From: Octopus sinensis
Lineage: Eukaryota
Length of the DNA: 64,000 nt
Assembly (NCBI RefSeq): GCF_006345805.1
Contig: NC_043007.1
Location: 74,710,001 to 74,774,000 of the forward strand
Reading direction: 5' to 3'
This document shows, one piece after another, positions 15,060-38,570 of this stretch. The notes under the pieces are model-generated. The model worked only from the letters and a program-made list of their open reading frames with translations, made no database searches and was not told the DNA's origin. Each line of letters starts with the position of its first letter. Within the stretch, counting starts at the first letter, position 1. The position numbers were made by a program, and so were the translations under genes.

Positions 15060-16450
15060 AAAAACAACGCGTCTTTCAGAAAACAACCTCAACTTTTCGT
15101 TTAGGCAACTAACAGAGTTCGTTGTTAAAAGGCGACGTGTTGTCTGGAATAATTACAGTTGTTATATTGTCCGTCGAATTCGTGGATAAACTGTGATAAC
15201 AAGTTACACAATTTTTTAATTCACAGATTGCAGCGGATAGAACTGGTAAAGGTGTTAAGAGAGCGTCGTTAAGTTGCAGGGTTTTAATAAAAAAAAAATG
15301 TTACTTAGAAAGGTGAGTGAGGAATCGTGTTGAGGATGGATTTGGTGTTGGAGGGTGATTGAGAGATCGTGCCGAGAATGAATTAGGTGCATGAAGCAGA
15401 TAGAGAGAAGAATGAAAGAAGGAATAAAATATAACTTGGCTCGGTGAGAATAAGAAATCGAGAGATTGCGTTAAGAAATGAGTGAAAGAAAGAGAATGTT
15501 GTAAGTGCTTAAACAGTAGCAACAAAGATAGTAAAAGGATGCGTTGATGATGGGGTATTATATAGTAGAGAGGAGAGAGAGAGAGAGAGAAGGGATGATT
15601 TACTCGTCAGAAGAAATAGGTATTTTAGGAATAAACGAAATGAGTGTTAAAGAAAAGTGAATGGTGTTCACGTAACGGGTGAGGCTAGCAGACTTACTAC
15701 CTACCTACCTATCTGCTAGTCAGTGCATATAATTAGAAATAACCAAGTAAATAACCAAACAAATTTCAAAATATAGAAAAATGAGCCAAATCAGCCTAGC
15801 ACCAAAATAAACCGTTCCCATCTTCTCAAACACCATCACTGACAGAGTCTGCTATGCCACCAAGCAGACGTACTATTTAATCTTTCGTCATTGCTGCTGT
15901 TGCTGCCCCGTTTCCTCGAGCTGTAGCAATAGTGGTAGTAGTAAAAAAAAAACCTGTGCAAGTCTATAAGTAGTCGTTGCCCAGCAGACGACTATAGAGA
16001 AAATATATTTATATATATATATAATACTAGTATTATTATCACGGCCTTAAAAAAAAAACTTTTTCGGATAATACCTGAAAGATTTACTGGCTCTGCCTTC
16101 GAAAGAAGAAGCGTCGTGTACGAGTCCATAATATATATATATATATAAACATGTATATATAGATGGACATACATGTATAAACACTGGCACGGCAATGATT
16201 TGAAGAGAATAGAAGTAAGAAAGTAACGGGAACTTTTGAAGAATCTTTTTATCTTAATCCATCACTAACGACGCGTTTAAACAACACCGTTCTGACTCCT
16301 GCGACTACACACATTGCTACTACCATTTCTACTATTGCCACTACCTGCGTGGAGGTGAAGTACGGAGGCTGTCAGGTTCGGCCTGCTACTAAAAGCAGAG
16401 GAGGAGTGCACTGTTGCTTCACTCTGAGTCGATAAATCTTCATCAACAAC
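15060..16450 (+). promoter_or_regulatory. Putative RyR promoter / 5' UTR region
   Basis: Unique, transposon-free, CpG-retaining sequence directly upstream of the ATG. Strong donor-like site AAAG|GTGAGT at 15309-15318. The TSS cannot be located from sequence alone. Confidence 0.45.
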
Positions 16451-16510
16451 ATGGCGGATTCGGCTGAGCCAGGCGGGGGAGAGCAGGACGACATTTCGTT
16501 TCTTAGAACG
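16451..16510 (+). CDS. RyR: Ryanodine receptor, first coding exon (MADSAEPGGGEQDDISFLRT)
   Basis: Translation matches the RyR N-terminus (Drosophila MAEAEGGSEQDDVSFLRT; human RYR2 MADGGEGEDEIQFLRT). Start context is CAACAAC-ATG-G, with an in-frame upstream stop TAA at 16433-16435. A phase-0 donor ACG|GTAAGA follows FLRT, the position where vertebrate RYR exon 1 ends. Confidence 0.92.
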
Positions 16511-17351
16511 GTAAGATACGACCTCCACTATATTTTAGACCAGTCTCCGCTCTAACAACATCTCTAGACTTCCATTAGATATTTTCACCACTTACCATTC
16601 TTAAAACTATCAAACTCATGTTCTTAATTATTTCCATCACGAAGCTTATTTTCATTGCAGCTTTTTCTATTTTCCTTGACAAGGTTTCGATCTTTGCTAC
16701 TTATAGATTTCCAATATGACTACATAAAACTAAGCGGTGTTTGTTTGGATTTTTTTCCCTTCATGCTGTAAATTTATGTCTATTTAATACCCTTTTTTCC
16801 TCCGTTAATGACACAAAACGCATTTGTCTTTCTTCTACTCTGAATGTCACCCCTTCTCACGTAAGAGGTTATTTTAGGTGCGTTCGCTCTTCTGTTTAGT
16901 AATACAAATAAACAAATGTTTCGTATTATCATTATTATTACTATCATTATTATTATTAATATACCAAACAGTTAATAAAACATACGATCTGAGCATATCA
17001 GTTGTAAGTTTGTATCAGATCACCTTCTGATGTGTGCAGATTATATTTGTGGATATAAATAGTTTTCTTTTCTTTCGTTAAACCTAAGATTCGAACCTAA
17101 TTTGGAAGTCAGCGCTGTCATGTCTGTTCGACCAAATTAACATGTTTGCAAATAAGTGTCACAGCAGATATGCCAACTCGGGTTGTCATACGAAAGAGAA
17201 AATGAAAGTAGCGACTGGTCATAGACAGCTGTCCACTGTCGTGTGCATACACATCTAAAAACTTGACAGAAAGCAACGGTTGCGTGAATGCGAGCTGCTG
17301 CGGCAGAAGCAGATAGATCAAGCAGTCGAGAAAGTTTCACATATCTGTTGA

Positions 17352-17392
<41 letters not shown>

Positions 17393-18417
17393 ACAGTAAC
17401 GATAACAACAGTGACTGCTATAGCAGCAACAGACTGCATGGAAACTTACACTATTCTTCATTCAACATACAAAAAGATGTTTCGAACGAAATCGATTTTA
17501 TTTTATCGTGTTTTCGTTTTTAAATCTATCAAGCAGAGAAAGGGGAAAAAAAAAAAAAAAACATGGACAGACATTTAAAATAATTACGTTTCCAGGCTCC
17601 GAATAATAATAAACACAGCAATAATAAATAGTCTGATCTTTTCTTTCGTTTATATTTTTCTATATGTATACAAGCAGTAGAAGTAAGGTGTTTAATTAAC
17701 ACAAAAGATATATCGCTTTACGGTTTACAAATATTTACATTAAGAATACATTTTACAAATGGTAATATTTATACTGATGTATTTTATGTGTAGCTTATTT
17801 CTTGTTGAAAAACAAATTTCCGTTATTGAAAACGTTTTATTTATTCTTCGCTACACAATTATGTTAAATTGATTTGAGAAAAAAAAATATTGTATCAACA
17901 AAGAGTTTCTGAAATTCATCGCTTCTTTTATTGTCATTTTATTATCATTATAAAAATTAAAGCAGTCACTTTTCTCTCCTCATCACCGCATTTTTTAATT
18001 CTTGGGCCACGCTACATACCACCTAAAAACATTTGTGTGTGTGTGTGTGTGTGTGTGTATACATGTGCATATATATGTGTATATATGTGCGTGTGTGTAT
18101 GTCTGTAAACATATATATACGTGTATATATAAATGTATAGGTATATATGTGTGTATATATATATATGTATACATATGTATGTATGTTTATGTGTGTATGT
18201 TTATGTGTGTATGTTTATGTGTGTATGTTTATGTGTGTATGTTTATGTGTGTATGTTTATGTGTGTATGTATATGTATGTATGTATATGTATGTATGTAT
18301 ATATATGTATGTATAAATATACATATAAATGTATATATATGTATATATATATATACATATAAATGTATATAGATATGTATATATATCTATATATATGTAT
18401 GAATATATAACTATGCA

Positions 18418-18453
<36 letters not shown>

Positions 18454-18536
18454 TGTATATATATGTGTATATATATATATGTATGCATGTATATATACGC
18501 ATATATATATGTATAATTGCATGTATATATTTATGT

Positions 18537-18669
18537 ATATTCTGTTTTGTCAGGGGAGAGTCATTCTCCTTTGGTGCCTTATAATTTAACACACTCACCG
18601 GTAAAATTTCCACTTATTTCTTTTTTATTTTTCTAAAATTTTCGTTGCATCTTGCAACCTTTTCAATAG
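18537..18669 (+). repeat. Solo copy of the 48399 repeat family
   Basis: ATATTCTGTTTTGTCAGGGGAGAGTCATT...CTTTTCAATAGT. Confidence 0.8.
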
Positions 18670-18714
18670 TTGTTGAATCTGTCAGTTAATGTGAATCTCC
18701 ACAGACATAACAGA

Positions 18715-18794
18715 ATATGTATATATAAATGTATGTATTTATATATCTATGTATGTATATATATATATGTGTATATGTATGTATATATATATTG

Positions 18795-18857
<63 letters not shown>

Positions 18858-19244
18858 GCATGTATATATGTATGTGTGTATATATATGTGTATGCATATA
18901 TATATATGTATGTGTGTATATATATGTGTATGCATATATATATATGTATATATATGTATATATATGTATATATAGTATATATATGTATATGTATGTATAT
19001 GAATGTATATATATGTATGTATATGTATGTATATGTATGTATATATATATGTATGTATATTTAAGTATATGTATACGTTTGTATATATCTATATGCATAT
19101 ATATATATATGTATCTATCTCTATATACATATGTTTGTGTGTATATATATGTGTATATATGCGTGTGTATATATGTATATGTTTGTATGTATATATGTGT
19201 ATATATATATGTATGTATATGTATGTATGTTTGTATTATGTATG

Positions 19245-19276
<32 letters not shown>

Positions 19277-20001
19277 TATATGTATGTATATATATGTGTA
19301 TATGTATGTATGTATATATATGTGTATATATATGTATGTATATATATGTGTATATATATGTATGTATATATATGTGTATATATATGTATGTATATATATG
19401 TGTATATATATGTATGTATATATATGTGTATATATATGTATGTATATATATGTGTATATATATGTATGTATATATATGTGTATATATATGTATGTATATA
19501 TATATATATATATATATCTGTATGTATGTATATATGTATATATGTATGTATATATATGTGTATATATAATGTATGTATATATATGTGTTATATATATGTA
19601 TATATATATGTGTATATATATATGTGTATGTATATATGTGTATATATGTATGTATATGTAGTATATATATATATATACATGTATGTATATATATAATATA
19701 TTCTGTATGTATATATATATGTGTATATATAATATATATATATATGTGTATGTATATATATATATCTGTACGTATATATATATATATCTGTATGTATATA
19801 TATATATATATCTGTATGTATGTATATATATATATATCTGTATTATGTATATATATATATCTGTATGTATAGATATATATATATATATCTGTATGTATAT
19901 ATATATATATATTATATATATATATCTGTATGTATGTATATATATATATCTGTATGTATATATATATATATATATCTGTATGTATGTATATATTATATAT
20001 A

Positions 20002-20043
<42 letters not shown>

Positions 20044-20825
20044 GTATGTATGTATATATATATATTAGTATGTATATGTATATATGTGTGTATGTATATC
20101 TGTATGTATGTATATATATATATTAGTATGTATATGTATATATGTGTGTATGTATATCTGTATGTATGTATATATATATTAGTATGTATATGTATGTATG
20201 TATGTGTATGTATATCTGTATGTATGTATATATATATTAGTTTGTATATGTATGTATGTATATGTATGTATGTGTATGTATATCTGTATGTATGTATATA
20301 TATATTAGTATGTATATGTATGTATGTATATGTATGTATGTGTATGTATATATGTATGTATGTATATATATATTAGTATGTGTATGTATATATGTATGTA
20401 TGTATATATATATTAGTATGTATATGTATGTATGTGTATGTATATATATATTTATATGTATATATATATTTGTATGTATGTATATGTATATATATATTTG
20501 TATGTATATGTATGTATATATATATTTGTATGTATATATATGGATATATATGTATGTATGTGTATATATATATATTAGTATGTATATGTATGTCTATATA
20601 TGTGTGTGAATATATATGTATGTATATGTATATATATATATATATATATGTATACACAAATGTGTTACATACACACATGCATGCATGTATGCATGTATGT
20701 ATGTATGTATGTATGTATGTATGTATGTATGTATGTATGTATGTATGTATGTATGTATGTATGTATGTATGTATGTATGTATGTATGTGTGTGTGTATGT
20801 ATGTATGTGCATACGTATGTATGTT
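18715..20825. repeat. About 2.1-kb compound (TA)/(TATG) microsatellite with higher-order units
   Basis: A roughly 26-bp unit is reiterated near 19290-19500, followed by TCTGTATG- and TTAGTATG-tagged variants and a pure (TATG)n tract. Similar arrays at 9817-10200, 18030-18540, 32900-33365, 36320-36880, 48895-49240, 56395-56890 and 61145-61445. Confidence 0.95.
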
Positions 20826-22744
20826 ACTTGATGTTTTAGCCATAAATTTGTTCTGGTCTGACAAAGCAACAGTGTTTTATTGAAAAACATCGGACTTGCC
20901 AATGTTTATAGGACTAGCTAAGAGTACGTTTTCTTATATGTCATCTCTTTTGTTTTTAAGACGATGAGATCTGATTAGAGGGAAATCTGGCTGTTGTTTC
21001 AAGCAGGTCGAGCGTCCACGAAGAGACGTCCTTGTCGGCTGTCTCTTACTTGTGTAACTGAATATAATAATGAACACACACTGTAGAATTCTACACGCTA
21101 ATTTGCAATTTATCTTGGCCAAACCATTTGTGAAGCATCTTAACTCACTTAGAAATAAAATGAAATAAAAGCAGTTAATACATTTTAAGTTAGCATCAAT
21201 TATATTTCGTTGCAGAAATTCATTATCGATAAATTCTACTATTAATTTTGTTTTCTTTGAGAAGAAATATCTTAAACCTATGATTAGAATATTTCGAGAG
21301 ATTTTTATTCTATATAAGTAACTATAATACATTCCTTGCTATTGTTTCTGAACGAGAATTCTTACTTAGCAATCAATGTAAACGAGAAGAATAACAATTT
21401 GACAATAACAATTGTTCCAATGCCATTTGGTGCCAAAAATAGTATTATCTTCATTACTTTCACCTGCATGGAATTTCTGTAATTCAGCTTGGTTAGTGTA
21501 ACAGTTGGTGATTCAAAATTTCGTATCGGAGACGAAGAAAAGGGATATGTTTTAGGTACATTAATCAACATTCTCCTTCCTTTTATTATATTATATTATA
21601 TAATTAAACTTTCAAATTCGTAGAAGCACGTGTGTATGCGGGTGTATGTGTGTGTGTGTGAGCGTTTTACGGTCTCTTAATCAGTAAATGCTGCATTTGC
21701 TGCTAATATTAATTTGTAAATCAGAACACGATTGTCAGAACATATTAAGTATTTCTTGTAATTGTAACCATTCTACTTGAAAAAAAAATATTCTATCACA
21801 AACTCTTGAAAGCTGAATAAAGCTAATAACTTGGTCTACTTCTCACCTTCCCCACTTCATTAAATCCCTCTCCTCGTGTTTTTATTTTTACTGTTGAATT
21901 TTTTCCCCTTTTATTTGGAAATGCTATAGTAATTCTTTCCCTCAATCGATGTTGTCTTGTCTGGCACCAGTATATTTACTGACGTGACTGCTTGAATAAT
22001 TAGCAAATTACTTTCGTCTCTGAGCCATTCTTAACCGAAAATAGCGAATATACATACAAAAATCTTTCTCTCTTACATTAATCTAAAATGTCAGAGTGTG
22101 TTATTTTATTCGGAGAGAACGCCTGATCGTGACGAAGAAAACCTGTGCCACCAATATTCGAAATAAATAGATTCCGTGAACAAAACACTCCTACGTACAA
22201 GTAACGAGTTAGCATTCATTTGACTGTGTATGAAGCTAGTTCAAATGTTACGAAACAAAGAACAGATATTCATGTATTTCTTACCTGTGTAGCTACTTAA
22301 CACTCTTCCCTTGAATGTGCGTCTTAGAATTTTCACAGGTGATACTTTTCGTTAAATAAATGTTTAGCTGGCTATCGACAGACGTAGTATTAATTTGCAT
22401 TGATGTTGTGTAGGAGGACAACATTTCCATTCACATAAACCAACAAAATATACGATTTTCTGTCATACAGTCATACATATTTTCTTCTCACTATCACAAG
22501 ACACTTAAACATTTTGGGAAAATTTTTGATTTGTTCTTTAAAACTGAGCCCTTCGTCCATTTTTTAAAAATCTATTTTTCCTGAGTCCAGACAATCTTTG
22601 TTCACAACTGATTAAAATGTACAGAGGAATTCTAGGATTGAATCTTAGCTTATTATTACCAAATAATTTAATTATTTCTTGTCGATATGCAGTTTATTTT
22701 GCACGACAGTAATAACAATGAGTTTAAATTTTGGCACAACGGTA

Positions 22745-23105
22745 AGGGGGCTAGTCTACTCGATTACATGGACCCTAGAGCTCAACTGGTACTTATTTAA
22801 TCGAACCCGAAAGTATGAAAGGCAAAGTCGACCTCGGTAGAACTTGAACTCAGAACATAAAGACAGACGAAATACCTATTTTTTTACTACCCACAAGGAG
22901 CTAAACACAGAGGGGACAAACAAGGACAGACAAACGGATTAAGTCGATTATATCGACCCCAGTGCGTAACTGGTACTTAATTTATTGACCCCGAAAGGAT
23001 GAAAAGCAAAATCGACCTCGGCGGAATTTGAACTCAGAACGTAGCGGCAGACGAAATATCGTTAAGTATTTCGCCCGGCGTGCTAACGTTTCTGCCAGCT
23101 CCCCC
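22745..23105 (-). mobile_element. SINE family B, dimeric
   Basis: A full unit followed by a second, headless unit starting at TATTTCGTC. Confidence 0.8.
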
Positions 23106-23332
23106 GCTTCATAATAATGATAATAATGAGTTTTAGCATATGTGCATGGACACACATTTTGGAGGACATCGCAGTTGGTCGTATCGATTATATTGATTTC
23201 AGTACTTAATTGGAACTTCGATCATTGCGTGTGTCCAAAACTCACACACACACACACACACACCAATACTCACGCCAATAATAATGTATGTATATGTATG
23301 TATATATATATTTGTATGTATGTATATATATA

Positions 23333-23412
<80 letters not shown>

Positions 23413-23814
23413 ATACACATATACACAAATGTATTACATACACACATGCATGCATGTAGGTATGTGCGTACGTATGTATGTATCTACGTACGTACGTAGG
23501 TATGTTACTTGTTTTAGCCATTCCACGCCAAAAATCAAAGACATTTCAGCTATTACAATACCTTGGGTATTTATCATCATATGAGAGGGTAGAGTAGCGA
23601 AGCATACTTAATTGCTGACAGAGCGACTAGATGGAGGTCCGCTTGTTGGATCATATGAGAGATATTAGGAATATTGGAATGGAAAGAAAGAGATTATGTT
23701 GATGCAGCGATTTAAAATAGTCGTCGTTTTTAATGTTTGTTATCGGTTCGAGTAACATCCATGATACACAAGGAATTATTTAGCTAGGAATATAATAAAT
23801 ATATAATGTCAAAA

Positions 23815-24040
23815 GGCGGCGTGCTGGAAGAAACGTTAGCGCGAAATGTTTAGCGGTATTTCATCTGTCGTTACGTTCTGAGTTCAAATTCCGCCGAGGT
23901 CGACTTTGCCTTTCATCCTTTCGGGATCGATAAATAAAGTACCAGTTTCGCACTGGGGTCGATGTAATCGACTTAATCCCTTTGTCTGTCCTTGTTTGTC
24001 CCCTCTATGTTTAACCCTTTGTGGGCAGTAAAGAAACATA
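23815..24040 (+). mobile_element. SINE family B
   Basis: Full-length match. Confidence 0.85.
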
Positions 24041-24923
24041 TAATAAATATATAATGTCAAAGGTATTATGAGAGTTAGACCGCAAATAAATAAGTCACAA
24101 TGTGTGTGTGTGCGTATGTGTGTGTGTGTGCGTGCGTAATGCACGTATGAGCTTGTATGCATGTATTATACATATAAGTGTGTGTGTATATATATCTTAT
24201 TTAATAAACACAATATATATTTTTATGAGCAACTAATAGCTTCATGCGATGAAAAACGAACTCAGCATTTTATAACACATCTGGTGCCTTCATGCAATTC
24301 TCAGGTTCTGCCTATGGACAGGGCCGTCAATACGTATAAAAGAAATTAATGTTAAACTGAAGAATTACTCAATACTTGTGAACAGAGTATACATTTCTTA
24401 TGCTTTTACAAGAAAAAGGTTGACAGTGACCGCAAAGCGTTGGTCGACTCGCTTTCTTCATACACACATGCATGCATACATACATACATACATACATACA
24501 TACATACACTCACACACATGCACACATGCATGTATACATACATACACTCACACACATGCACACATGCATACATACATACATACATACACACATACATACA
24601 TACATACATACATACATACATACATACATACATACATACATACATACATACATACATACATACATACATACATACATACATACATGCATGCATACATACA
24701 TACATACATACACACACATACATACATACATACATACAAACGAGAGACTGGATAAATTTTTGATGTACTTTAGTCACCATTACACGTATTTCATTTGCTA
24801 ATAGGAGCAACAAAATTGTACACGTAGAAAACATGTAAGATATCTCTTATTAAAAATTCTTCAGGCAGAGAATCAAATAAGAGGACACAGTTTGGATTCT
24901 AACCACACACACACATATATATA

Positions 24924-25135
24924 TTCTTTTATTCTTTTACTTGTTTCATTCATTTGACTGCGACCATGCTGGAGCACTGCATTTTAGTCGAAGAAATCGA
25001 CCCCAGGACTTATTCTTATAAGCTTATTCTATCAAACGCTTTTGCCGAACCGCTACGTTACAGGGATGTAAATACACTAACATCAGTTGTCGAGTGATGG
25101 TGTGGGGAGAGAAACAGAGACACCAAGACACAAAC

Positions 25136-25233
<98 letters not shown>

Positions 25234-25385
25234 CAGGCTTCTATCAGTTTCAGTTTACCAAATCCTCTCACAAGGCTTTGGTCGCCCGAGGCTATAGTAG
25301 AAGACACTTGCCCAAGGTGTCACACAGTGGGACTGAACTCGAAACCATGTGGTTGGGAAGCAAGCTTCTTACTACACAGCCATGG
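24924..25385 (-). mobile_element. SINE family A
   Basis: Reverse-complement match to the family. Confidence 0.85.
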
Positions 25386-27365
25386 TTGCGACACCCCCCC
25401 TACATACACACACATATAAACGTACCTTTTACTCTGAAAAGAAGTTAGTGCATAAGCAGAGATGCGGAGTCTCGTGAGGTCACTTTAGTGCTGGTGCGAC
25501 GAAAATCGCATCCAGCACACTCTGTAATGTTGTTAGTGCCAGCAAAAACATCCAGCCTTAAAGACAAAGCCGAAAATTAAACGCGTGAGTGAAGTGATAT
25601 TCCGGCCCATATGGATGGCTACTAACCCCAACAGTAGTATCACACTGAACTCATTTCTCAGCACGAATCGCAGAGTTTGAGCCAAGCAGAATCGAATTGC
25701 ACTTCAGGTTTTTCTTTATACGATTTTATCTTGTTCAAGAAGGAAGTTCTGGCATGAACTAGGGGTTCTTCACTCCCTGTGGTTTACATACTAGTTAACC
25801 CAGAGATTCGGACTGTCACACGTCCTACTTTTCCGGCTCAGAGTAAACCTGGAAACAATAGTAGCTAAGGGGTGGTTATGAGTTAAAACTACATCCGGTA
25901 GTGGGGGGCTTGTCACGGGATTCCAGGGTTTTGAGGAGCACATACATAAATCTGTAAAGGCCCATGGCCCAGTGGTTAGAGCGTTAGGCTCACAATCGTG
26001 GACCAGGTAGCATGTTGTGTTATTTAGCAAGACATTTTATTTCATGTTGTCCAGTTCATTCATCTGTAGAAATGGTGGTGCCAAGTTGTACTGGCCTTTG
26101 CCTTTCCCTTGGATAACATCTGTGACGTGGAGTGGGAAGGCTGGTATGCATAGGTGACTGCTGGTCTTCCATAAACAACCTTGCTAGGACATGTGCCTAG
26201 AATCGGAACTTTCTAGGCGCAATTCCATAGTCATTCATGGCCGAATGGGGTCTTTACCCTTTACCCTTTTACCGTACCCTGTACGGTAATTTAAATTACA
26301 TTTCTTGTTTTCTACATTACCAATGTAACACGAATTAAAATGAGTTTCACTTAGTCAAATAACCTTTCTTTTTAAATATCTTTTTTTCTAAAAATGTTCT
26401 TCTTTTATAACGTAAATAATGTCATATAAGTAATAGGCACTTATTTACTGCATACTGAAGAGACTCACTTAAATCGAAATACCAGCCTGAAATGAGAAAA
26501 ACGACAAATTAAACAAATATTAAAAAATTAGATGATGTACTCCACTCCAGTTATTTTACATCACTAACTAGATAGAAAACAGAGAATTGATTTCTTTGCA
26601 AGAAAGTCTTTCCCTTTCAATTAAAAGAAAACCAATGAAATAAGAGTTTATAAGGCTATTTAAATTTTAATTGGAGAATTATGACCTTCCCTCAGAAAAT
26701 GCACAATGTTAATTGTGCGGAAGTAGTCCGTTGCTCAGCCATGCACGTAGGAGGAGGAGGAGGAGAAGAAGAAGAAGAAGAAGAAGAAGAAAAAGAAAGA
26801 AAGAAAGAAAGGAAGAAAGAATTTCAGGAAAAAAAAAGCCATATATAATAATGATGATAATAATAGTAATAACAACAACAATAATAATAATAATAATAAT
26901 ATTGACAAGGGCAATGTTAATAATGATGATGCTGATAATGATGTGCAGGTTGAGGATGATGGTGGTAGTGTAAAGGAAGAAAGGGAAAGAGAACACCAAC
27001 CTGATAATGATGATGACGAGGAGGAGGAGGAGGAGGAGGAGGAAGTCTCAGTAAAAATTGTTCAAATTGAATGTCTTCTTAGCAACAGCAACACGGAGAG
27101 TCGACCTGCTAAAATAGCAAACAAAAAACTTCTCCAGTAGGGGAAGAAAATAAACTGGAACAGTTTCAACCAATCCTTACATCTTGCTTTTACACAACTA
27201 ATGAACAACAAATCTATTAGTCAGACATTTCCAACAAACGTCTTGGTTACTAACTCTCTTGTCATCCAACCCCAATGGAGTGTCTATGTTTATATTATAA
27301 CATCTAGAAGGTTAGCTTTTTTTCACCTGCTTCAGTTATTGGAATGTGACAATAAAGGGTTAGAT

Positions 27366-27916
27366 CAGTGGTTCCCAAGCTTTTTCGGGCTACCCCCTCC
27401 ACTTGGCACCCAGGCCACATTCCTAGCGCCCTCACCTCAACTAACCTATTTCTTTACTACCCACAAGGGGCTAAACATAGAGGGGACAAACAAGGACAGA
27501 CAAACGGATTAAGTCGATTATATCGACCCCAGTGCGTAACTGGTACTTATTTAATCGACTCCGAAAGGATGAAAAGCAAAGTCGACCTCGGTGGAATTTG
27601 AACTCAGAACGTAGGGCAGACAAAATACCGCAAAGCACTTCACCCGGTGTGCTAACATTTCTGCCAGCTCGTCGCCCTGACTAACCATCACAAACAGACC
27701 TCTTTCTGAAGCAAATTCAAAGCAATTGTATTTCACAAATAAAACTTAACCTAATGAACCCATTATTTTGTTGTTTTTACATGAATCACTACCCCATTAT
27801 TACCCACGCGTTTTACATGAATCGCTACTCCATCATCGCCCCACTTTTCTTCAACGCCCCCTCGGAACTTTCCACCGCCCCCAAGGACACAATACCGCCC
27901 ACTTTGGGAACCACTT
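27366..27916. mobile_element. hAT-Charlie-type MITE with a nested SINE
   Basis: TIRs CAGTGGTTCCCAA / TTGGGAACCACTT. Imperfect 8-bp TSD GGTTAGAT / GTTTAGAC. A family-B SINE is inserted at 27448-27672. Confidence 0.75.
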
Positions 27917-28349
27917 GTTTAGACGAACAAATCGCCACCTGCTTCAGTCATTGGAATGCGACAATGCTGGGGTACCGCCTTGGAGGGTTTAGGCGAACAA
28001 ATCGCCCCTAGGACTTATTTTAAAGTCTGATCGTATTCTTGATTTATTATAGCTATCTCCACATCTAAAGGATGTGTCACTATTACCAAATGGCAATTAA
28101 GACCAGCCCCACTTAAAAAAGGAGAGCTAATCTCAGAATTCGAGAATTTTCTCCAAAGTTGAGATGTCATTAAAGAAAAGGACAGGTTTATTATTTGGAG
28201 ATAAGAGGGCAGTCTTGGACATGTGTTTCTGACTCAATACACCAGCCCAATTTTTTATTTTTTGTATAAGTCTAATTCATTGGTTACTGGAGATAAGGCC
28301 GGACAATTATCGTGCTAAGTCTTCCCTATAACCATCAAGCACTACCATT

Positions 28350-29000
28350 ACAAATCTTTCAACTTTCGTTCTTCGTTGAAAAAAAATGGGTTCTGAAAGT
28401 ACTCCAAAGCACAGTTTATTTCACTAAGGCTTTTAGATAAATCCACTTGTAGAGGCGTCTCTTTATCGATATAGTAACCCGATACTTGCGGTTCGTTGGT
28501 GAAGTTCTCATTAACAAATATTATTTGCATCAGCTTCTTTAAAACCTGCTTCCGGCGCCATTTGTACAAGACCATTGCTCATCGAGATTGTTTCATTCTC
28601 TGTCTTAGGAACTTCCTTGATTACATTTGGACACAAATACGTTCAAAACTCCAATGTTGAACTAGCTTCTTCCCACATATCTTTCATATATTTTTTGACT
28701 CCTTGCATAATGTTATAATTTTTCCAGAATTCTTTGGCAAACTGCAGTTTATCGTCCATCGCAACAATCAGCCGACATCTAAGATAATATTCTTTGAATT
28801 TGGAAATAATTTTATGAGCTTTACGCTGTAGTTGAGTGTGCTAGGAGGAATTAAAACGATTGTAAAAGATATTTCGAACTTTTGGAGAGAATCAAGATGG
28901 AACGTTGTCCAAAAACAGATGTATTATCTTGGGTTCAAAATTATTCTTAGCGTCGTAACATTTGACTGCACAGAAGAAATGTTCTGGGATTTTTTTAGAT
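28350..29000 (-). mobile_element. pogo/Tigger-like transposase relic
   Basis: AVKCYDAKNNFEPKIIHLFLDNVPS ... SKFKEYYLR ... EFWKNYNIMQGVK..KDMWEE ... MAPEAGFKEAD, with several stops and frameshifts. This is the typical TIGD/Tigger DDE C-terminal pattern. Confidence 0.75.
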
Positions 29001-29089
29001 TATAAAACCTATACTCCAATTTTTTTTCGGACATGTGAACAACTGTAAGAAAATTATCCAATGACACCAATCAAACAGGGTCCAATTCA

Positions 29090-29256
29090 CAGTAGCGTGG
29101 CTAGAGTGTTTGCTGTCCGGGGCAGTCCCAGACTTTATTACCTCCATCTGAGGGTGGGGAGAGACAAAGCTTATACAGGCTTATGGATTAGACCCACAAG
29201 TAAAGGTATCGCCTAGGGTGGACTGTTCCCTGCGACCCTGCTCATCTACGCTACTG
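29090..29256. mobile_element. Small MITE with CAGTAGCGT ends
   Basis: Terminal inverted repeat CAGTAGCGT...ACGCTACTG around a GC-rich interior. No clear TSD. Confidence 0.45.
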
Positions 29257-30184
29257 CCGAAACTCTCATATACAATAAGTATATCTTCAGCTTTGATGCT
29301 TTCCACTCCTCTCACTTCTTACCTCGGTACCTGTTCTCCCAACTTCTAATATTACTGGCTGACTGAAGGTAGCGAGCTGGCAGAATCATAGCACGCGAGG
29401 CAAAATGCTTAGTGGCACTTCGTTCGTCTTTACGTTCTGAGTTCAAATTCCGCCAAGGTCAACTTTGCCTTTCATCCTTTCGGGGTCGATGTAACCGACA
29501 TAACGCCACACACGCCCCAACGAAATTGCTGGCCTTGAGCCAAAATTTGAAATCAATATTACTGGCTGACTGATCACCCCCTTTAATTTTTGCTGTTTTG
29601 GGGTCACCACAATTTGACGTCCGTCAACTCCTGGTCGTCATCCCTCAACCAAACCTACAAATATCAAGATGAAATCGAATGTGACGGATTTACTTGACTA
29701 TCACCAACATCAACAGTCAAACGCACTGCAGTGCTTAGTCTACTCCAAGGCTCGATGTTGTAAAAAGAATTATCATCTTTAAAATCTTCAAATATTCTGT
29801 CGAATATATATTATTAACATGCATTCAGAGTTGGAGTCCAATTAGAGGCACGACTAGAACCAATTCCGTTTAGTCAGATCAGTGTTCCTAAGGAAATCTA
29901 TTTCCACCAACGAAAAGGAAGCATATCAAGCAACCACACCATAAAAGGTGTGGTTTGTTTCTCTTTCACTTTGTCTCTATGGGAGTTCTTTGTACAAATT
30001 TACGAACGTGTTCGTCCGAATGGATTCCATTGATATAAACAGTACAGAAAGGGATTGCAATTGAAACAGAGTAATCTTTCTATCGCTTATTGGTCTTTTC
30101 TAGAAATCTAAGCATTCATTTGAACAGATACCTACCTCCTTTCTCATTCTAAGTACTCTTACTTAATGGAACCACACACACACA

Positions 30185-30217
<33 letters not shown>

Positions 30218-30721
30218 GATTGATATGCACATACCTTGTAGATGAGTTTTATCCATACATCTATGCACACACCCTGCTAACATCTCATGTTCTTCTCTTT
30301 CTTAATTCTTAATAAAGTTGTTATAAAGTCTATCCCAACCCGTCCACTTTTATCAATTTACTTTTAACTACATTAAGAATAGAAATAACTAGAAATAATT
30401 GCACAGGTCTGAAAAAAAAAACGTGGTAGCCATAACCGCTTTGGTCCTCCTCTCCGATTTCCAAGTTTGGTGTAACTTGATCTTTCTGAGGTTAAGGAAA
30501 CGTCAACGTGGAGGAAATGACAAAGTATTTAGGGTGGAATTTGTCAGTAAATAGATGTGGTAGGTAGTCAGTCGTTCAGATCAGACAAGGAGGAGCAGTT
30601 GTAGTAGTCACAGAAAGGGAATATGACAAACGTGACAATTAACCATCAGCTGTAGCATGTTGGTGACTGACAGCTTACCTTTCAGTCATCTGGTCTTTCT
30701 GGATGCAGTCCAACAGGATAA

Positions 30722-30940
30722 GGCAGCGAGCTGGCAGAAACGTTAGCACTCCGGGCGAAATGCTTAGCCGTATTTCGTCTGCCGTTACGTTCTGAGTTCA
30801 AATTCCGCCGAGGTCGACTTTGCCTTTCATCCTTTCGGGGCCGATTAAATAAGTACCAGTTACGCACTGGGGTCGATGTAATCGACTTAATCCGTTTGTC
30901 TGTCCTTGTTTGTCCTCTCTGTGTTTAGCCCCTTGTGGGT
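30722..30940 (+). mobile_element. SINE family B (tRNA-like head GAGCTGGCAGAAACGTTAGC, B-box GAGTTCAAATTCC)
   Basis: About 13 copies in the window, including 14455-14640(-), 27448-27672(-), 29368-29555(+), 44090-44275(+) and 52225-52410(-). Confidence 0.85.
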
Positions 30941-31150
30941 ACTCTTTTACTCTTTTACTTGTTTCAGTCATTTGACTGCGGCCATGCTGGAGCACCGCCT
31001 TTAGTCGAGGAAATCGACCCCAGAACTTATTCTTTGTAAGCCCAGTACTTATTCTATCGGTCTCTTTTGCCGAACCGCTAGGTGACGGGGACGTAAACAC
31101 ACCAGCATCGGTTGTCAGGCGATGTTAGGGGGACAAACACAGACACACAA

Positions 31151-31181
<31 letters not shown>

Positions 31182-31343
31182 CATATATATACGACAGGCT
31201 TCTTTCAGTTTCCGTCTACCAAATCCACTCACAAGGCATTGGTCGGCCCGGGGCTATAGCAGAAGACACTTGCCCAAGATGCCACGCAGTGGGACTGAAC
31301 CCGGAACCATGTGGCTGGTTAGCAAGCTACTTACCACACAGCC
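30941..31343 (-). mobile_element. SINE family A, young copy
   Basis: Reverse-complement match, CpGs intact. Confidence 0.85.
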
Positions 31344-32120
31344 AAGAAATAGATATATACATTGTCGTCGTTGTCATTATTCCGAATATGTTTGCGTTAT
31401 TTTAATGTGAAGTGAGTACTTGTGATTTATAAATCTTCAGAATCGTTAAGAGATTAAATTTTTTTTTTCTGAAGAGAAAGCTCAGCATTATGTATAGACA
31501 GTAGTTTGGATTTCTTCCATCATATTTGATGTATTGAAGCAGAGAGAATTGTCCATTAATCAGCAAATTCAGAAAGGTTGCTTTTCTCACTGATGGGGTT
31601 TACTACTGCATGTTACAATAGTTACTTGTAAAGAGAAAATGATGGGAGACATTGTTTTTGAGAACACACTCCAAAGAGTGAATTGATTGCGGGGCGATAC
31701 ATGGAATACTTCTCTGGTCTGATCACTGATTTTTCTGTTTCAAATAATCAATATTTGAAACTGATGAAACACTTAGCTCCTGAATTGACGAGTATCTCTG
31801 TTCCCTAGTTGCCGATTGTTGAAAGCAGTCAACAATTCAAACAATTCTGCAAACGTCTAATCAAGTAATTCCTAATTCCATATGGAAAAGAAAATCTCCG
31901 TAAAACTGCTTTGTTGAATTAATCTATATTTTGTGATGACACTGAGTGAATGTTAAGATTAGAGAATATATTATGGAAGCTGGTTCAACTATCAATTCTG
32001 TTTTGTAATCTATTGTACTTTAGCAAATTCTTGTCGGCATTGGCATTAATTCAACAACGTAAATTATATCAACGTGTATCACGAAGTATCAGCTAAATTT
32101 TTTATATTTCATTTATCATT

Positions 32121-32375
32121 ATCTTTTGTTTTTACTTCTTTCAGTCATTAGACTGCAGTCATACTGGGACACTACCTTGAAGTGTTTTAGTCGAACAAAT
32201 CGACCCCCCAGTACTTATTTTTTGTTGTTGCTTTTATAAAGCCTGTCATACCGATTTAGTCGGTCTCTTTTATCGAACCGCTAAGCTACGGGAACGTAAA
32301 TGCACTAACAGCGGTTGTGAAGTGGTGCTGGGAGACAAACACAGATACAAAGACACATACACATGAATATATATA

Positions 32376-32411
<36 letters not shown>

Positions 32412-32592
32412 TGTATGTATGTATGTATATATATACACGACGGACTTCTTTCAGCGTTTGTCTACCAAATCCACTCACAAGGCTTTGGTCGGCCCGGGAC
32501 TTATTGTTGAAGACATTTTTTTCACGAACCACGCTGTGGGACTGAACCCGGAAACATGCGGTTGGAAAGCAAGCTTTTTCCCACACAGCCAT
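32121..32592 (-). mobile_element. SINE family A
   Basis: Reverse-complement match. Confidence 0.8.
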
Positions 32593-33008
32593 AAACCTAT
32601 ATTTCATATTATGCAATAGACGAATAATATACCACTTTCAAAAATTGATTTTTTCCTACATAAAGCGAGGAGCGCTCCTACAAGTATAAGTCCTGATGCT
32701 TATGGTATTTTGTTACTTCTAGTAATCAGTCACGGAGAGCAACTATTTTGATAATACCAGCTGTTACTAATAGTAGTCACATCCACTCAGATAATCCTTA
32801 CCGTCCTAAATAATAAAAAAGACATATAAAATAAAGTAGTTTGGCATACCTGAAAATGCTTTTTAAAATGTTTTGTTGTTTTTTGACGCAGTGCACTTTG
32901 TATGTATGTATGTATGCATATATATATATGTATGTATATGTGTGTATATATACATATGTATATATATATACATATATATGTGTGTATATACATACATATG
33001 TATGTATG

Positions 33009-33043
<35 letters not shown>

Positions 33044-33174
33044 ATGTATATATATATATATGTGTGTGTGTGTGTATGTATGTATATATATATATGTGTG
33101 TGTGTGTGTGTATGTATGTATATATATATATATATGTGTGTGTGTGTATGTATATATGTATGTATGTATATATA

Positions 33175-33205
<31 letters not shown>

Positions 33206-33367
33206 ATATATATATATGTGTGTGTGTATGTATATATGTATATGTATGTATGTATATATATATATATATATACACACATACATATGTATATATATGTATA
33301 TATACATATATATATATGTACATACCTACATATATATGTATATATATATATATATATATGCATATAT

Positions 33368-33517
33368 GGGTACAGGACATCAAAAAAATAAAAAGGTTAA
33401 GCACAATGAGAAACGAAAACATAGAAAACGAACTTTTTTACGAACAATGAAAAAAAAAACACAGAGAAACGAGACATGTAACATAAAGAATATCCCCCCT
33501 TCATCAGTTGTCCCTGC
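33368..33517 (-). mobile_element. Possible Penelope-like terminal fragment of another family
   Basis: Minus strand reads GGGACAACTGATGAAGGGGG (CTGATGA at 33501-33507). Abuts a TA/TG microsatellite. Confidence 0.3.
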
Positions 33518-33784
33518 TAATGATCAGCTATGGAGTACAGAAGATGAGTACAAAAGACAATTCTGGATATGTTTTGGTCGTATTAGCCCTTCTCTCTTAT
33601 TCCTTGTGTATTTAGATTTAAACACATTCTTATTCTGAATTCTCCCCGAATGCAAAACTCAAGTTCTTAGTACAACAAAGAGACAATATCACCGGGCATT
33701 TTATTTGTCATATCAACGAATCTCAGTTTAATTAGTTATAACAAAGGACTGAAAACGATGACTTATTGCACTCTACTTATTACA

Positions 33785-34185
33785 TACTAGCAGTATCGCT
33801 CGGCGTTGCTCGGAGTTGTTTCGACCCTTTAGAATTGGAATTTTTGAAAAGTAAAAATGTTGCATTATGTAGCTTGTTATTCTCTTTAAGTGAACATTTT
33901 TCTGGTTGAAATACACCGAAAAATGGCGACACATTAGTCAGAAAATCGTAAAAAAATAGGGATTTTCATAGAAAAAAAAGGACCTTTTTTATGTAAATAA
34001 TTTTTGGTCTTAACATGGTCCGATTTGAATATTATCTTCTACGGAATGAAGAGCAAGCCTTCTTCTATCACACTCTCAATTTTGGTCAACTTGCGCCGCA
34101 GGGTCTCGGAGGAGATAGTGTTAGTTGAAGACTACCAAACCTGCCACACAAACACAGACAACTTCAGCCTTGTATATAGAGAGAT
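33785..34185 (+). mobile_element. HINE/Lep1-like element, copy 1 of a pair
   Basis: Starts TACTAGCAGTATCGCTCGGCGTTGCTCGG and ends ACAGACAACTTCAGC...ATAGAGAGAT. Highly similar to 35056-35450. Confidence 0.75.
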
Positions 34186-34620
34186 TTACCATATAGAAAA
34201 CAGTGGCGTCAATTAGTTTTATAACCTTTAGTTTTTTTCCGAACTAAATCGCCGGGTTATTATTGTTGTTGTTCAGCCCCAGGTCAGTTCTTGTCGAATA
34301 AACCGTGATTCAAAGCATTTCGTAACTATCCCATCTTTCTTTTTCCTAAGCTCACTGAACAATGACTGGATTATCTAAAACAGTAAAGTATAGATTGAGA
34401 GAAATTTTGCTTCTATTTCTAGTACAGTGAATGCGGCACAAAATCTCTCTTGTTGACTCTGAACCGCTCAATTTACGACAGACTTTTTTTCAAGACATTC
34501 AAAAGGTTGTTGGAAAGTCATTCTTTCGTACGTTTATTAACTCCACAATCTTCTTTCCAGATAAGTTTGTAGAAAATGGTTCATTAGCAATATTATTTAC
34601 CAAAGAACACTTCCAAACAG

Positions 34621-34710
34621 TTGATGTTGCTTAAGGGAAGCAATCTTTTGTTGATGTTGCTCAAGAGAAACATTCTTTTGTTGATTTTGCTAAAGAGAAA
34701 TATCCTGTTG
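34621..34710. repeat. 3 x 30-bp minisatellite
   Basis: TTGATGTTGCT.AAG.GAA.CA.TCTTTTG repeated at an exact 30-nt period. Confidence 0.85.
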
Positions 34711-35055
34711 TTATTTAAGAATCCTTGTAATCTCATTGTAAGTCGGTTCTCATTGTGAGTTATAAGTGAGTTATCCTTGACGACATCGTAGAAACGATAT
34801 TTGGTAAATCGGTATTTAACTAATTGAGTTTACAGACACAATAGAAGTCTAATAATGAATCGGAAATATTACATTATCTTCTTCATTGAACTGCGAATAT
34901 CGTCTTTGCTATTTTACTGTATATTTTTTCAAAGCAAAATGGTGCAAAAGATTTACTTTCAAGTCTGTTATGAAATCATTTCTTTTGAGTTGAAGAATAC
35001 ATCTCTGAAGCAATGTTCTCTGAGCAATGTTCTTCGACAGTGAAATTTATACATA

Positions 35056-35450
35056 TTCTAGCAGTCTCGCCCGGCGTTGCTCGGGTTTGTTTCGACAGCT
35101 TTAGAATTGGAATTTTTGAAAAGTAAAAATGTTGCATTATGTAGCTTGTTATTCTCTTTAAGTAAACATTTTTCTGGTTGAAATACACCGAAAAATGACG
35201 ACACGGCAGTCAAAAAATCGTAAAAAAATAGGGATTTTCATAGAAAAAAAGCACCTTTTTGATGTAAAGAATTTTTGATCTTAACATGGTTCGATTTGAA
35301 TTTTATCTCCTACGGAATGAAGAGCAGGCCTTCTTCTATCATACTCTCAATTTTGGTCAACTTGCGCCGCAGGGTCTCGGAGGAGATAGTGTTAGTTGAA
35401 GGCTACCAAACCTGCCACACACAGACAACTTCAGCTTTATATATAGAGAT
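35056..35450 (+). mobile_element. HINE/Lep1-like element, copy 2 of a pair
   Basis: Direct repeat of 33785-34185. Confidence 0.75.
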
Positions 35451-35635
35451 TTGAGAAAATTCGGGAACACTCATTAAATGGTAAAAAGAGATAAACTTGT
35501 AGAATCGCGAAGGCATCGGAAAGAAATGTCTGAAATTTCTAATTATGGTTCTTTATGTTTTTATTTTAAATTCCGCAAGGCCAACTTGGCTTCCCAATCT
35601 TAACATACACACACACACGCGCACCATATATATAT

Positions 35636-35862
35636 TTCTTTACTACCCACAAGGGGCTAAACACAGAGGGGACAAACAAGAACAGACAAACGGATTAAGT
35701 CGATTACATCGACCCCAGTGCGTAACTGGTACTTAATTTATCGACCCCTAAAGGATGAAAGGCAAAGTCGACCTCGGCGGGATTTGAACCCAGAACGTAG
35801 CGGCAGACGAAATACGGCTACACATTTCGCCCGGCGTGCTAACGTTTCTGCCAGCTCGCCGC
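35636..35862 (-). mobile_element. SINE family B
   Basis: Full-length match. Confidence 0.85.
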
Positions 35863-36341
35863 CTGTACGCGCACCATATATATGCGTATATTTTTCACTT
35901 ATGTACATCATTGATGGGAGTAACCATCGTTGGGGAGACTAAATGAACCAGTTCTTCACAGACGATACCTCTTTTTCATATTTGTTCTGCAACTCGGCCA
36001 TTCTTCCTTTGTCTTCGTCGGGGATGCAATAAGCTAACGACCGGTCTTTGGAAACCTGGAATCAATGATTCTGTTCTTCACAAACTATGATATCAAAATA
36101 AAAAAATAAGAAGTACCAGATTCACTTAATATTTCCTTAAGGCATCCTAGATATTAATAAAATTATAATAGCCGTCAGAATCTGAAACTTTGTGAAGTGG
36201 CTTCCATTTTCATCTACCTGCTCACTTTTATTTATTTCCTCTTCAATATGCCGCTGTTTTGTTTTTACTATACCTTTGTGTTTATAGAGATTTCAACTGT
36301 ATACCTCTCTACCCATCCCCATATATATATATATATTATAT

Positions 36342-36395
<54 letters not shown>

Positions 36396-36698
36396 ATATG
36401 TGTGTGTGTATATATGTATGTATGTATATGTATGTATGTATTATATATATATATATATATATATGTGTATATATGTATATATGTGTATATATGTATATAT
36501 GTATATGTGTATATATGTGTATATATGTGTATGTATATATATATGTATATATATGTATATGTATATATGTATATATGTATATATGTGTATATATATGTAT
36601 GTATATATGTATGTATATGTATATATATATGTATGTATATATGTATATATATATGTATGTATGTATGTATATATATTATATATATATATATATGTATG

Positions 36699-36747
<49 letters not shown>

Positions 36748-36812
36748 ATATGTATGTATATATATATATATATATGTATGTATATATGTATATATGTATG
36801 TATATATGTATA

Positions 36813-36848
<36 letters not shown>

Positions 36849-38165
36849 TGTATGTATGTATGTATGTGTGTGTGTGCATGCCTGCGGGTGTGTGGCGTTC
36901 AAAAACAAAGAGTTAGATGCACACATGCTTGCATTTATTTTCTGATGACTTCTACATCTGATTAACAGCAAGTGCACAGACCAGCCTGGAAGCTAATAGT
37001 TTATTGAATACGTAAATCCATAGCCTTTATTTGCACATTTAGAAGCCATGGTTGAGTACAATCTGGAATGCATCCAAATATTGCTGTTAGCAACGGTGTG
37101 CTGCAAATACGATGCTTGTGTTTTTCATGGCTGTTTTCAGCTGCGCATCATCCGCAATTTAGTTAACTGCACAAGGTCTCACAACATCTTTTTTTTTTCT
37201 TTACGCAAGTAAAAAAAAACCTTATAGTTTTATTACGAAGAGAATATTGATAAGTACACTCTCACGATGACTATCTTCTGGTGTATATTTGTCAATATTT
37301 CGAGTTGCTTCACCTGCCTCTGGCAATTTGCCAAAACAACATATTATGTTAGAATTTCAAACGCTATAAAGCAATGGCATCCACGATGATTATTGCTATT
37401 TTTTGTGTTGCTTTATTCCGTTAATAAGTGAGTGATCTTGTTTCAAAAGAACATATGTTGTGTGTATAACATCAGGTATGCTCCAGTTCACTGTGACTTC
37501 TTTGCCTCACGCAACAAATCTTAGCATCAAATACCTCTGCATAGAGGTGAACAATGCAAGAATTATCGCGATCCTTTATGTTAGTTTATGAAAAGCATAA
37601 CGTATATAGTACAACCAGCTGCCGCTCATGAGCGAGTATGGTTTGGTAACATGTAGTAGCAAACGTTTGCTAGTTATTTTAGCTGTCTACACTGTCCCAA
37701 ACAGATGTAGACACCTTGTCGTATCACTTCACCAAGACCCAGTAGAATATCCAGATTGTGAAAATTGAGGAGAGGAAAGCGGGGGTAAATGTATCAGTAC
37801 CCAACTGGGACTGCGTTTACAACTGAGAAGACTGGAGTAACATAAACTGTAGGGGCTTGCTCAAGGACACAATACGTTAACTGGACCAAGAACTGAACAC
37901 ACGACATCAGGTTATTGAGTTGAACACACTAACCACTTGGCCACGTGCCTTTTATGAAGGCACATCATAAGGAGGTACAATCCAATTGTACCTCCTTTAT
38001 CAGATTAAAATTTGACTGATGTATAGCTATTTAAAAGGCAATAAAATATCTCTAGTATTCTATCTTTTATTTCAGCAAATTTCCCTCCCAATTTCTGTCT
38101 ATCAGTCTGACTGTGTATTTGTCTGTCTGTGCGTCTCTTTCTCTCGTATATTTGTATTACACATA

Positions 38166-38570
38166 AGGCGTTAGCACGCCGGGCGAAATGCTAAGCGGTG
38201 TTTCGTCTGCCGCTACGTTCTGAGTTCAAATTCCGCCGAGGTCGACTTTGCTTTTCATCCTTTCGGGGTCGATAAATTAAGTACCAGTTACGCACTGGAG
38301 TCAATATAATCGACTTAATCCGTTTGTCTGTCCTTGTTTGTCCTCTCTGTGTTTAGCCCCTTGTGGGTAGTAAAGAAATAGGTATTTCGTCTGGCGCTAC
38401 GTTCTGAGTTCGAATTCCACCAAGGTTAACTTTGCCTTTCATCCTTTTGGGGTCGATTAAATAAGTATCAGTTACGCACTGGGGTCGATGTCATCGACTT
38501 AATCCATTTGTCTGTCCTTGTTTGTCCCCCTCTATGTTTAGTCCCTTGTGGACATTAAAGAATTAAATAT
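38166..38570 (+). mobile_element. SINE family B, dimeric
   Basis: Same junction (GAAATAGGTATTTCGTC) as the 22745 dimer. Confidence 0.8.

What the first reader, a model, noticed from the sequence alone, without database searches (positions are those of the whole stretch)
16451..16516. Hidden 20-codon first exon of the ryanodine receptor, with the vertebrate intron position
The only host exon I can identify in 64 kb is below the ORF-track threshold and is masked by an antisense ORF. Seen: MADSAEPGGGEQDDISFLRT|GTAAGA, an upstream in-frame stop and a strong start context. Established: insect RyR starts with EQDDVSFLRT, and human RYR1/RYR2 exon 1 ends right after FLRT. Inference: an ancient bilaterian intron, here >47 kb, which automated annotations may truncate at the 5' end.
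Basis: partly seen in the sequence, partly recalled or inferred. Interest (0 to 1): 0.7.

Follow-up and report, generated by a model that had tools for sequence, protein, structure and literature searches.

The report
First coding exon of a ryanodine receptor gene
The 60-base stretch is almost certainly the real first coding exon of this animal's ryanodine receptor (a muscle and nerve calcium-release channel), cut off from the rest of the gene by a first intron of at least 47 kb; it is a correct but ordinary piece of gene annotation.

Summary
ATG 16451 opens 20 codons (MADSAEPGGGEQDDISFLRT) that end at 16510. GTAAGA follows, an in-frame TAA lies six codons upstream, and the start context is AACAACATGG. 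The peptide matches the N-terminus of ryanodine receptors. GEQDDISFLRT is identical in nematode RyRs, and arthropods have EQDDVSFLRT. The chance expectation for EQDD[IV]SFLRT in this window is about 9e-9. A relative from sea-water DNA over a cold-seep mussel and crab bed has 18 of 20 residues identical. It differs by 9 synonymous and 2 non-synonymous codons, has the same donor position, and has unalignable flanks, so the exon is under coding selection. DNA from a nematode, a shrimp and a third arthropod-like contig shows a phase-0 intron right after FLRT. Vertebrate RyR fragments lose similarity at exactly that point. No other RyR exon lies anywhere in the window, by tblastn with full-length RyRs and by a profile search. 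Intron 1 is therefore at least 47,490 bp; the shrimp orthologue has about 91 kb. The antisense ORF has no homologue or Pfam match. The rest of the gene, its transcription and the claimed annotation truncation could not be tested. The finding is ordinary: a known gene and a known kind of conserved intron.

The parts
16176..16181 (+). TATAAA hexamer, a possible core-promoter TATA box (speculative)
   Evidence: Read from the sequence. It lies about 20 nt before the start of the ATG-free leader. There is no transcript evidence.
16195..16450 (+). ATG-free leader of 256 nt, the likely 5' UTR or part of it (inferred)
   Evidence: The previous + strand ATG is at 16195. A gap this long is in the top 0.9% of ATG-to-ATG gaps in the window. 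The region lies in a 13.5-18.5 kb stretch with CpG observed/expected of 0.9-1.36, against a window median of 0.68.
16433..16435 (+). In-frame TAA stop, six codons upstream of the start codon
16451..16510 (+). First coding exon of a ryanodine receptor gene: ATG plus 19 codons, MADSAEPGGGEQDDISFLRT
   Evidence: The exon is 18/20 identical to P0231, shares GEQDDISFLRT exactly with nematode RyRs, and differs from L003 by 9 synonymous and 2 non-synonymous codons with unalignable flanks.
16511..16516 (+). 5' splice donor GTAAGA of intron 1, phase 0
   Evidence: GT(A) aligns with the donors of four other species. The PWM score is in the top 0.5% of GT sites.
16511..64000 (+). Intron 1, at least 47,490 bp, running off the window; full of SINE-like copies and microsatellites
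   Evidence: No RyR exon was found by motif scan, by tblastn with 120 N-terminal fragments, by tblastn with full-length RyRs or by a profile HMM of exons 2-4 at maximum sensitivity, best E = 5.5. Repeats are described.
16277..16528 (-). Antisense 83-aa ORF, judged a chance ORF and not a gene
   Evidence: No database protein shares even three 5-residue words with it. There is no Pfam match, and no such gene product is on record. Dozens of stop-free stretches of this length occur in the window.

Best explanation
Window 16451-16510 (+) is the first coding exon of the host animal's ryanodine receptor gene. The host is probably a mollusc. Translation starts at ATG 16451. The 20 residues form the short N-terminal tail that leads into the first beta-trefoil domain (Pfam Ins145_P3_rec), which starts in exon 2. 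The exon is spliced from the GTAAGA donor at 16511, across a phase-0 intron of at least 47.5 kb, to an exon 2 that lies beyond the window. By homology that exon should begin [GED]D.V.L.C and carry AEGFGNR. What is shown: the sequence features, the homology, coding-type conservation, and conservation of the intron position in a nematode and in arthropods. What is inferred: that the exon is transcribed and spliced, that the rest of the gene follows downstream, that the promoter lies within a few hundred bases upstream, and that the host is a mollusc.
For: 1. Anatomy: ATG in an A(-3)/G(+4) context, an in-frame TAA six codons upstream, 20 codons, then GTAAGA.
2. Homology: arthropod RyRs read M..(E/S)EGxSEQDDVSFLRT|EDMV. 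Nematode RyRs (Onchocerca P0102, Trichuris P0125, Toxocara P0215) read ..GEQDDISFLRT|GD[IV]V. All named hits are RyR.
3. Chance: the expected number of matches in the window is 9e-9.
4. Selection: the relative P0231/L003 has MADSAEIGGSEQDDISFLRT followed by a GTAGGA donor. It differs by 9 synonymous and 2 non-synonymous codons, with 10 of the 15 nucleotide differences at third positions. Its flanks are 53-55% identical, the same as the shuffled control at 54%.
5. Intron position: the same phase-0 site is seen in DNA of Onchocerca (145-bp intron), Penaeus indicus (about 91 kb) and contig L009 (67 bp). Read-through ORFs and vertebrate fragments break at the same residue.
6. Donor strength: top 0.5% of GT sites.
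7. Leader: a 256-nt ATG-free stretch and a CpG-undepleted neighbourhood.
8. Uniqueness: the exon region has no self-similar copy in the window, so it is not part of a repeat.
Against: No other RyR exon is in the 64 kb, so linkage to a complete gene is unproven. There are no transcript data. The source genome and its annotation are hidden, and no molluscan full-length RyR with this N-terminus was retrieved. The peptide is only 20 residues, so domain-level tests such as Pfam cannot be applied to it alone. The vertebrate boundary is supported only indirectly.
Confidence: 0.9

Rival explanations
1. It is an orphan or duplicated copy of RyR exon 1. A segmental duplication or rearrangement left this copy no longer joined to a working RyR gene, and the functional exon 1 lies elsewhere.
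For: No exon 2 or later exon lies within 47.5 kb downstream. Linkage to the rest of the gene was not observed.
Against: The ATG, the reading frame, the Kozak-type context and a strong donor are all intact. Against a distant relative, substitutions are 9 synonymous to 2 non-synonymous. This shows long-term constraint on the lineage, although a recent duplicate would look the same. A first intron of about 91 kb in the shrimp orthologue shows that such distances are normal for this gene. The region is single-copy within the window.
Confidence: 0.06
2. It is a chance ORF that happens to resemble the RyR N-terminus, or the real gene here is the antisense 83-aa ORF.
For: The sense ORF is only 34 aa and lies below usual ORF thresholds. 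The antisense ORF is longer.
Against: The expected chance occurrence is 9e-9. The match starts at the orthologous ATG and stops at the orthologous intron. It is conserved in another species with a synonymous pattern. The antisense ORF has no homologue and no domain.
Confidence: 0.01
3. It is a processed pseudogene or a fragment derived from cDNA of RyR.
For: None beyond the fact that only a short piece of RyR is present.
Against: Similarity ends exactly at the exon 1 / intron 1 boundary, with a GT donor. A retrocopy would continue into exon 2 sequence ([GED]D.V.L.C...AEGFGNR), and that sequence is absent.
Confidence: 0.01
4. It is one of several alternative first coding exons or promoters of the RyR gene, used only in some tissues.
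For: A very long first intron leaves room for alternative promoters. Nothing in the window tests this.
Against: The peptide is the canonical N-terminus shared with other phyla. No second copy of the motif is in the window.
Confidence: 0.02

Closest known systems
Invertebrate ryanodine receptor genes (Drosophila RyR, nematode unc-68-type RyR of Onchocerca/Trichuris, Penaeus RyR)
   Same: The N-terminus has the form M-x(5-9)-EQDD(V/I)SFLRT. The start codon sits at the same aligned position. A phase-0 intron falls directly after the T codon. In Penaeus the first intron is also very long, about 91 kb.
   Different: The window has I where arthropods have V, which is the nematode state. It also has a species-specific SAEPGGG linker. 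Only exon 1 is visible here.
Vertebrate RYR1, RYR2 and RYR3
   Same: The exon ends in ..(V/I)QFLRT. Similarity in fragmentary vertebrate models breaks exactly before DDEVVLQC. RYR2 exon 3 starts at c.169 (PMC4526874), which is consistent with exon 1 ending after FLRT.
   Different: Vertebrates have GEDE(V/I)QFLRT in place of EQDDISFLRT. The vertebrate boundary was not read from DNA here.
Inositol 1,4,5-trisphosphate receptor genes, the sister family that shares the Ins145_P3_rec/MIR/RIH domains
   Same: The N-terminal domain superfamily is the same once exon 2 is reached.
   Different: To my knowledge the IP3R N-terminus lacks the EQDD.SFLRT motif. No IP3R appeared among the named hits.

Membership tests
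Ryanodine receptor gene, first coding exon | N-terminal peptide motif [ED][QED]D[DE][VI][SQ]FLRT within about 20 residues of the initiator Met | tested here: met
   MADSAEPGGGEQDDISFLRT. The 11-mer GEQDDISFLRT is identical in nematode RyRs, and 18 of 20 residues match P0231. Chance expectation is 9e-9.
Ryanodine receptor gene, first coding exon | Start codon at the position of the orthologues' start, with an upstream in-frame stop | tested here: met
   ATG aligns in all five species, A at -3 is invariant, and TAA lies six codons upstream.
Ryanodine receptor gene, first coding exon | Phase-0 intron immediately after the T codon of FLRT, with a GT donor | tested here: met
   ACG|GTAAGA in the window. 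The same site is seen in Onchocerca, Penaeus, L003 and L009. The donor is in the top 0.5% of GT sites.
Ryanodine receptor gene, first coding exon | Coding-type conservation between species | tested here: met
   9 synonymous and 2 non-synonymous codon differences against L003. Flanks are at the shuffled-control level of identity.
Ryanodine receptor gene, first coding exon | Downstream exons on the same strand that encode Ins145_P3_rec, MIR, RIH, SPRY and the channel domain | not testable with these tools
   None lies within the window. The sequence beyond 64000 is not available, and the source assembly is hidden.
Ryanodine receptor gene, first coding exon | Transcription and splicing from 16510 to exon 2 | not testable with these tools
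   No RNA-seq data are available.
Intron shared with vertebrate RYR genes | Vertebrate exon 1 ends after FLRT, in phase 0 | tested here: inconclusive
   The evidence is indirect. Fourteen vertebrate-type fragments diverge exactly before [DE][DE][EQ]VVLQC, six of them with Q just before it. One lizard model diverges right after FLRT. RYR2 exon 3 starts at c.169. No vertebrate DNA was read.

The most novel reading that the evidence does not exclude
The public gene model of this species' RyR lacks this exon, because the first intron is at least 47 kb and the exon is only 60 nt and shadowed by an antisense ORF. The annotated protein would then start at a false downstream Met. Alternatively, the giant repeat-filled first intron carries alternative promoters or enhancers for tissue-specific RyR expression.
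Probability: 0.25. Interest if true: 0.2.

Novelty: already known. Interest (0 to 1): 0.12.

Why it matters
The practical value is for annotation. A 60-nt first coding exon, at least 47 kb from the next exon, is easily missed by gene finders, and a truncated RyR model would mislead work on its N-terminal domain. The finding also adds one more lineage to a phase-0 intron position that is shared by nematodes and arthropods and, on indirect evidence, by vertebrates. That is expected for an old metazoan gene. Nothing here opens a new question.

Tried and rejected
- **Molluscan RyR:** the representative search with an N-terminal profile gave insect, fish and nematode RyRs, but no identifiable molluscan full-length RyR among the best 150.
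- **Exact look-ups:** the sense 34-aa ORF and the antisense 83-aa ORF are not on record.
- **Antisense ORF as a handle:** I tried it as a way to reach orthologous loci, and it has no homologue.
- **Exon 2 in the window:** I looked with a motif scan, tblastn with 120 fragments, tblastn with full-length RyRs and a profile HMM at maximum sensitivity. All were negative.
- **Other genes and RNAs:** Rfam and tRNA scans found nothing. Pfam on ten of the more complex ORFs found nothing. This includes ORF pieces at 8.1-8.5 kb that look mariner-like by eye.
- **Literature:** a search for splice-variant names that would fix the human RYR2 exon 1/2 boundary found none. A search for the SINE sequence string found none. 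Two searches for molluscan RyR gene structure found nothing useful.
- **Rejected readings:** chance ORF, retro-pseudogene and IP3R.

Full report
**Observation**

- ATG is at 16451.
- Twenty codons read MADSAEPGGGEQDDISFLRT and end at 16510.
- GTAAGA follows at 16511-16516.
- The nearest upstream in-frame stop is TAA at 16433, six codons before the ATG.
- The start context is AACAACATGG.
- The sense ORF runs only 34 aa before an intronic stop.
- An 83-aa antisense ORF at 16277-16528 overlaps it.

**Identity**

The tool refuses queries under 40 aa.

Every named hit was a ryanodine receptor. The N-termini that were recovered read as follows:
- insects: MAEAEGGSEQDDVSFLRT|EDMVCLSC
- shrimps: MADSEGSSEQDDVSFLRT|EDMV
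- Onchocerca: MTDKDGTGDGEQDDISFLRT|GDIV

A profile search of 1.84 billion representatives added three more:
- Trichuris muris: MADSQENSAGEQDDISFLRT
- Toxocara
- vertebrate RYR1/2/3 fragments: ..GEDE(V/I)QFLRT|DDEVVLQC

With the window's own six-frame amino-acid frequencies, EQDD[IV]SFLRT is expected 9e-9 times. The match begins at the orthologues' initiator Met and ends at their exon boundary.

**Conservation**

The last protein search used exon 1 plus its intron read-through. It found one protein, P0231: MADSAEIGGSEQDDISFLRT followed by intron read-through. It is carried on six short contigs.

Two of those contigs come from sea water sampled just above mussel and galatheid-crab beds at a South China Sea cold seep (PMC9357000). 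The donor organism is therefore probably a deep-sea invertebrate, plausibly a mussel. This is an inference.

Only window 16448-16517 aligns to these contigs, at 75.7% identity. Within the exon, 9 codons differ synonymously and 2 non-synonymously, and 10 of the 15 nucleotide differences are at third positions. The 150-nt flanks are 53-55% identical, the same as the shuffled control at 54%. This is the signature of a protein-coding exon under purifying selection. The donor (GTAGGA) sits at the same place.

**Intron position**

DNA read here shows a phase-0 intron directly after the T codon in three further sources:
- Onchocerca flexuosa: acg|gtactat, 145 bp, then ag|GGCGATATC.
- Penaeus indicus: exon 1 at L002 2001-2054 and exon 2 near 93.3 kb, so intron 1 is about 91 kb.
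- Metagenomic contig L009: MADEGSEQDDISFLRT|gtatttg, 67 bp, then ag|DDMVCLQ.

Insect ORF calls read FLRT-V.. into the intron, or start ..Q|EDMVCLSC.

For vertebrates I have only indirect evidence:
- Fourteen vertebrate-type fragments lose similarity exactly before [DE][DE][EQ]VVLQC, six of them with a Q (CAG) immediately before it.
- One lizard model diverges right after FLRT.
- RYR2 exon 3 is c.169-273, Asn57-Gly91 (PMC4526874). That fits exon 1 ending at Thr16 if exon 2 is 120 nt, a length I know only from memory.

The five-species DNA alignment shows an invariant ATG, an invariant A at -3 and an invariant GTA donor, with wobble-type variation in between.

**The rest of the gene**

No other RyR exon is in the window on either strand. 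Four searches were negative:
- a motif scan for AEGFGN, GFGNR, LSVRAL and related motifs
- tblastn with 120 N-terminal fragments
- tblastn with full-length insect, fish and other RyRs
- a profile HMM of the region after FLRT from 19 diverse RyRs, run with all filters off, best E = 5.5

If the exon is in use, intron 1 is at least 47,490 bp. The 91-kb shrimp intron shows that this is not unusual for this gene.

**Surroundings**

- The exon region is single-copy within the window, while 24% of the window is self-similar.
- The 256 nt before the ATG contain no ATG. A gap that long is in the top 0.9% of ATG gaps.
- A TATAAA hexamer lies at 16176-16181.
- The stretch 13.5-18.5 kb has CpG observed/expected of 0.9-1.36, against a window median of 0.68. 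This is compatible with an unmethylated promoter region but does not prove one.
- An upstream non-coding exon cannot be excluded, so 'first coding exon' is the safe wording.
- The antisense ORF has no homologue, no Pfam match and no record. Stop-free stretches of that length are common in the window. I treat it as chance.

**Host**

The window is 35.5% G+C. It is rich in (TA)n and (TATG)n microsatellites and holds 19 copies or fragments of a ~200-bp SINE-like element. From memory that element resembles tRNA-derived SINEs of octopus. I could not verify this.

The closest exon-1 relative probably comes from a cold-seep invertebrate.

**Verdict**

This is the first coding exon of a ryanodine receptor gene, at an intron position shared with nematodes and arthropods and, on indirect evidence, with vertebrates.

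Three things remain untested: splicing, the presence of the rest of the gene beyond 64000, and whether public annotations miss the exon.

The result is ordinary biology and of interest mainly for annotation quality. Confidence in the exon assignment is about 0.9, and interest is about 0.12.

Noticed in passing
window 22872-23077(-), 23841-24036(+), 27444-27646(-), 30752-30941(+), 35633-35833(-), 38180-38565(+), 50758-50958(-) and 12 further fragments: A ~200-bp SINE-like interspersed element is present as 19 copies or fragments on both strands, at 80-94% identity. ARAGORN and Rfam see no tRNA in it. From memory it resembles tRNA-derived SINEs of octopus; this is unverified.
   Followed up: partly
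window 44777-45461: A 194-bp unit related to that SINE is tandemly repeated 3.5 times at 92% identity.
   Followed up: no
window 4307-4761, 13188-13619, 24918-25383, 30721-31344, 40082-40467, 56982-57577, 59093-59494: A second interspersed repeat family, up to 26 self-hits deep, is regularly joined to a (CA)/(TA)/(TATG) microsatellite.
   Followed up: no
window 18064-20824: A microsatellite block of (TATG)n/(TA)n, of which the 18716-20824 array alone is 2.1 kb at 19% G+C with strong GC skew, starts 1.5 kb into the intron. Similar blocks lie at 32.9-33.4 kb, 36.3-36.9 kb and 48.9-49.2 kb.
   Followed up: no
window 13500-18500, 22000-24500, 34700-36700: These stretches have CpG observed/expected of 0.9-1.36, in a window whose median is 0.68. 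The first surrounds the RyR exon and may mark an unmethylated promoter region.
   Followed up: partly
window 1-2000, especially 1584-1744: The + strand is strongly pyrimidine-rich (GC skew -0.24, AT skew -0.26) and carries a 52-bp CT-rich tandem repeat.
   Followed up: no
window 8119-8472 (-): ORF pieces here look by eye like the helix-turn-helix N-terminus of a mariner/Tc1 transposase (..HSGRPAITTTE....LSINKSSIQRML..), but Pfam finds nothing at E <= 0.1.
   Followed up: partly
window 52594-52807 and 55354-55493: Short tandem arrays with 66-bp and 72-bp units of unknown nature.
   Followed up: no
L002 (Penaeus indicus JAGYIC010000030.1) 2055-93330: The shrimp RyR orthologue has a first intron of about 91 kb at the same position. 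Its annotated 'ryanodine receptor-like' model is only 108 aa and ends in a proline-rich read-through. This is an example of RyR 5' ends being badly modelled in public annotation.
   Followed up: partly
Homologous-protein output: An 80-aa query returned only proteins of 53-138 aa, even though full-length RyRs with identical N-termini exist in the representative library. The word-index search seems to restrict targets by length.
   Followed up: no
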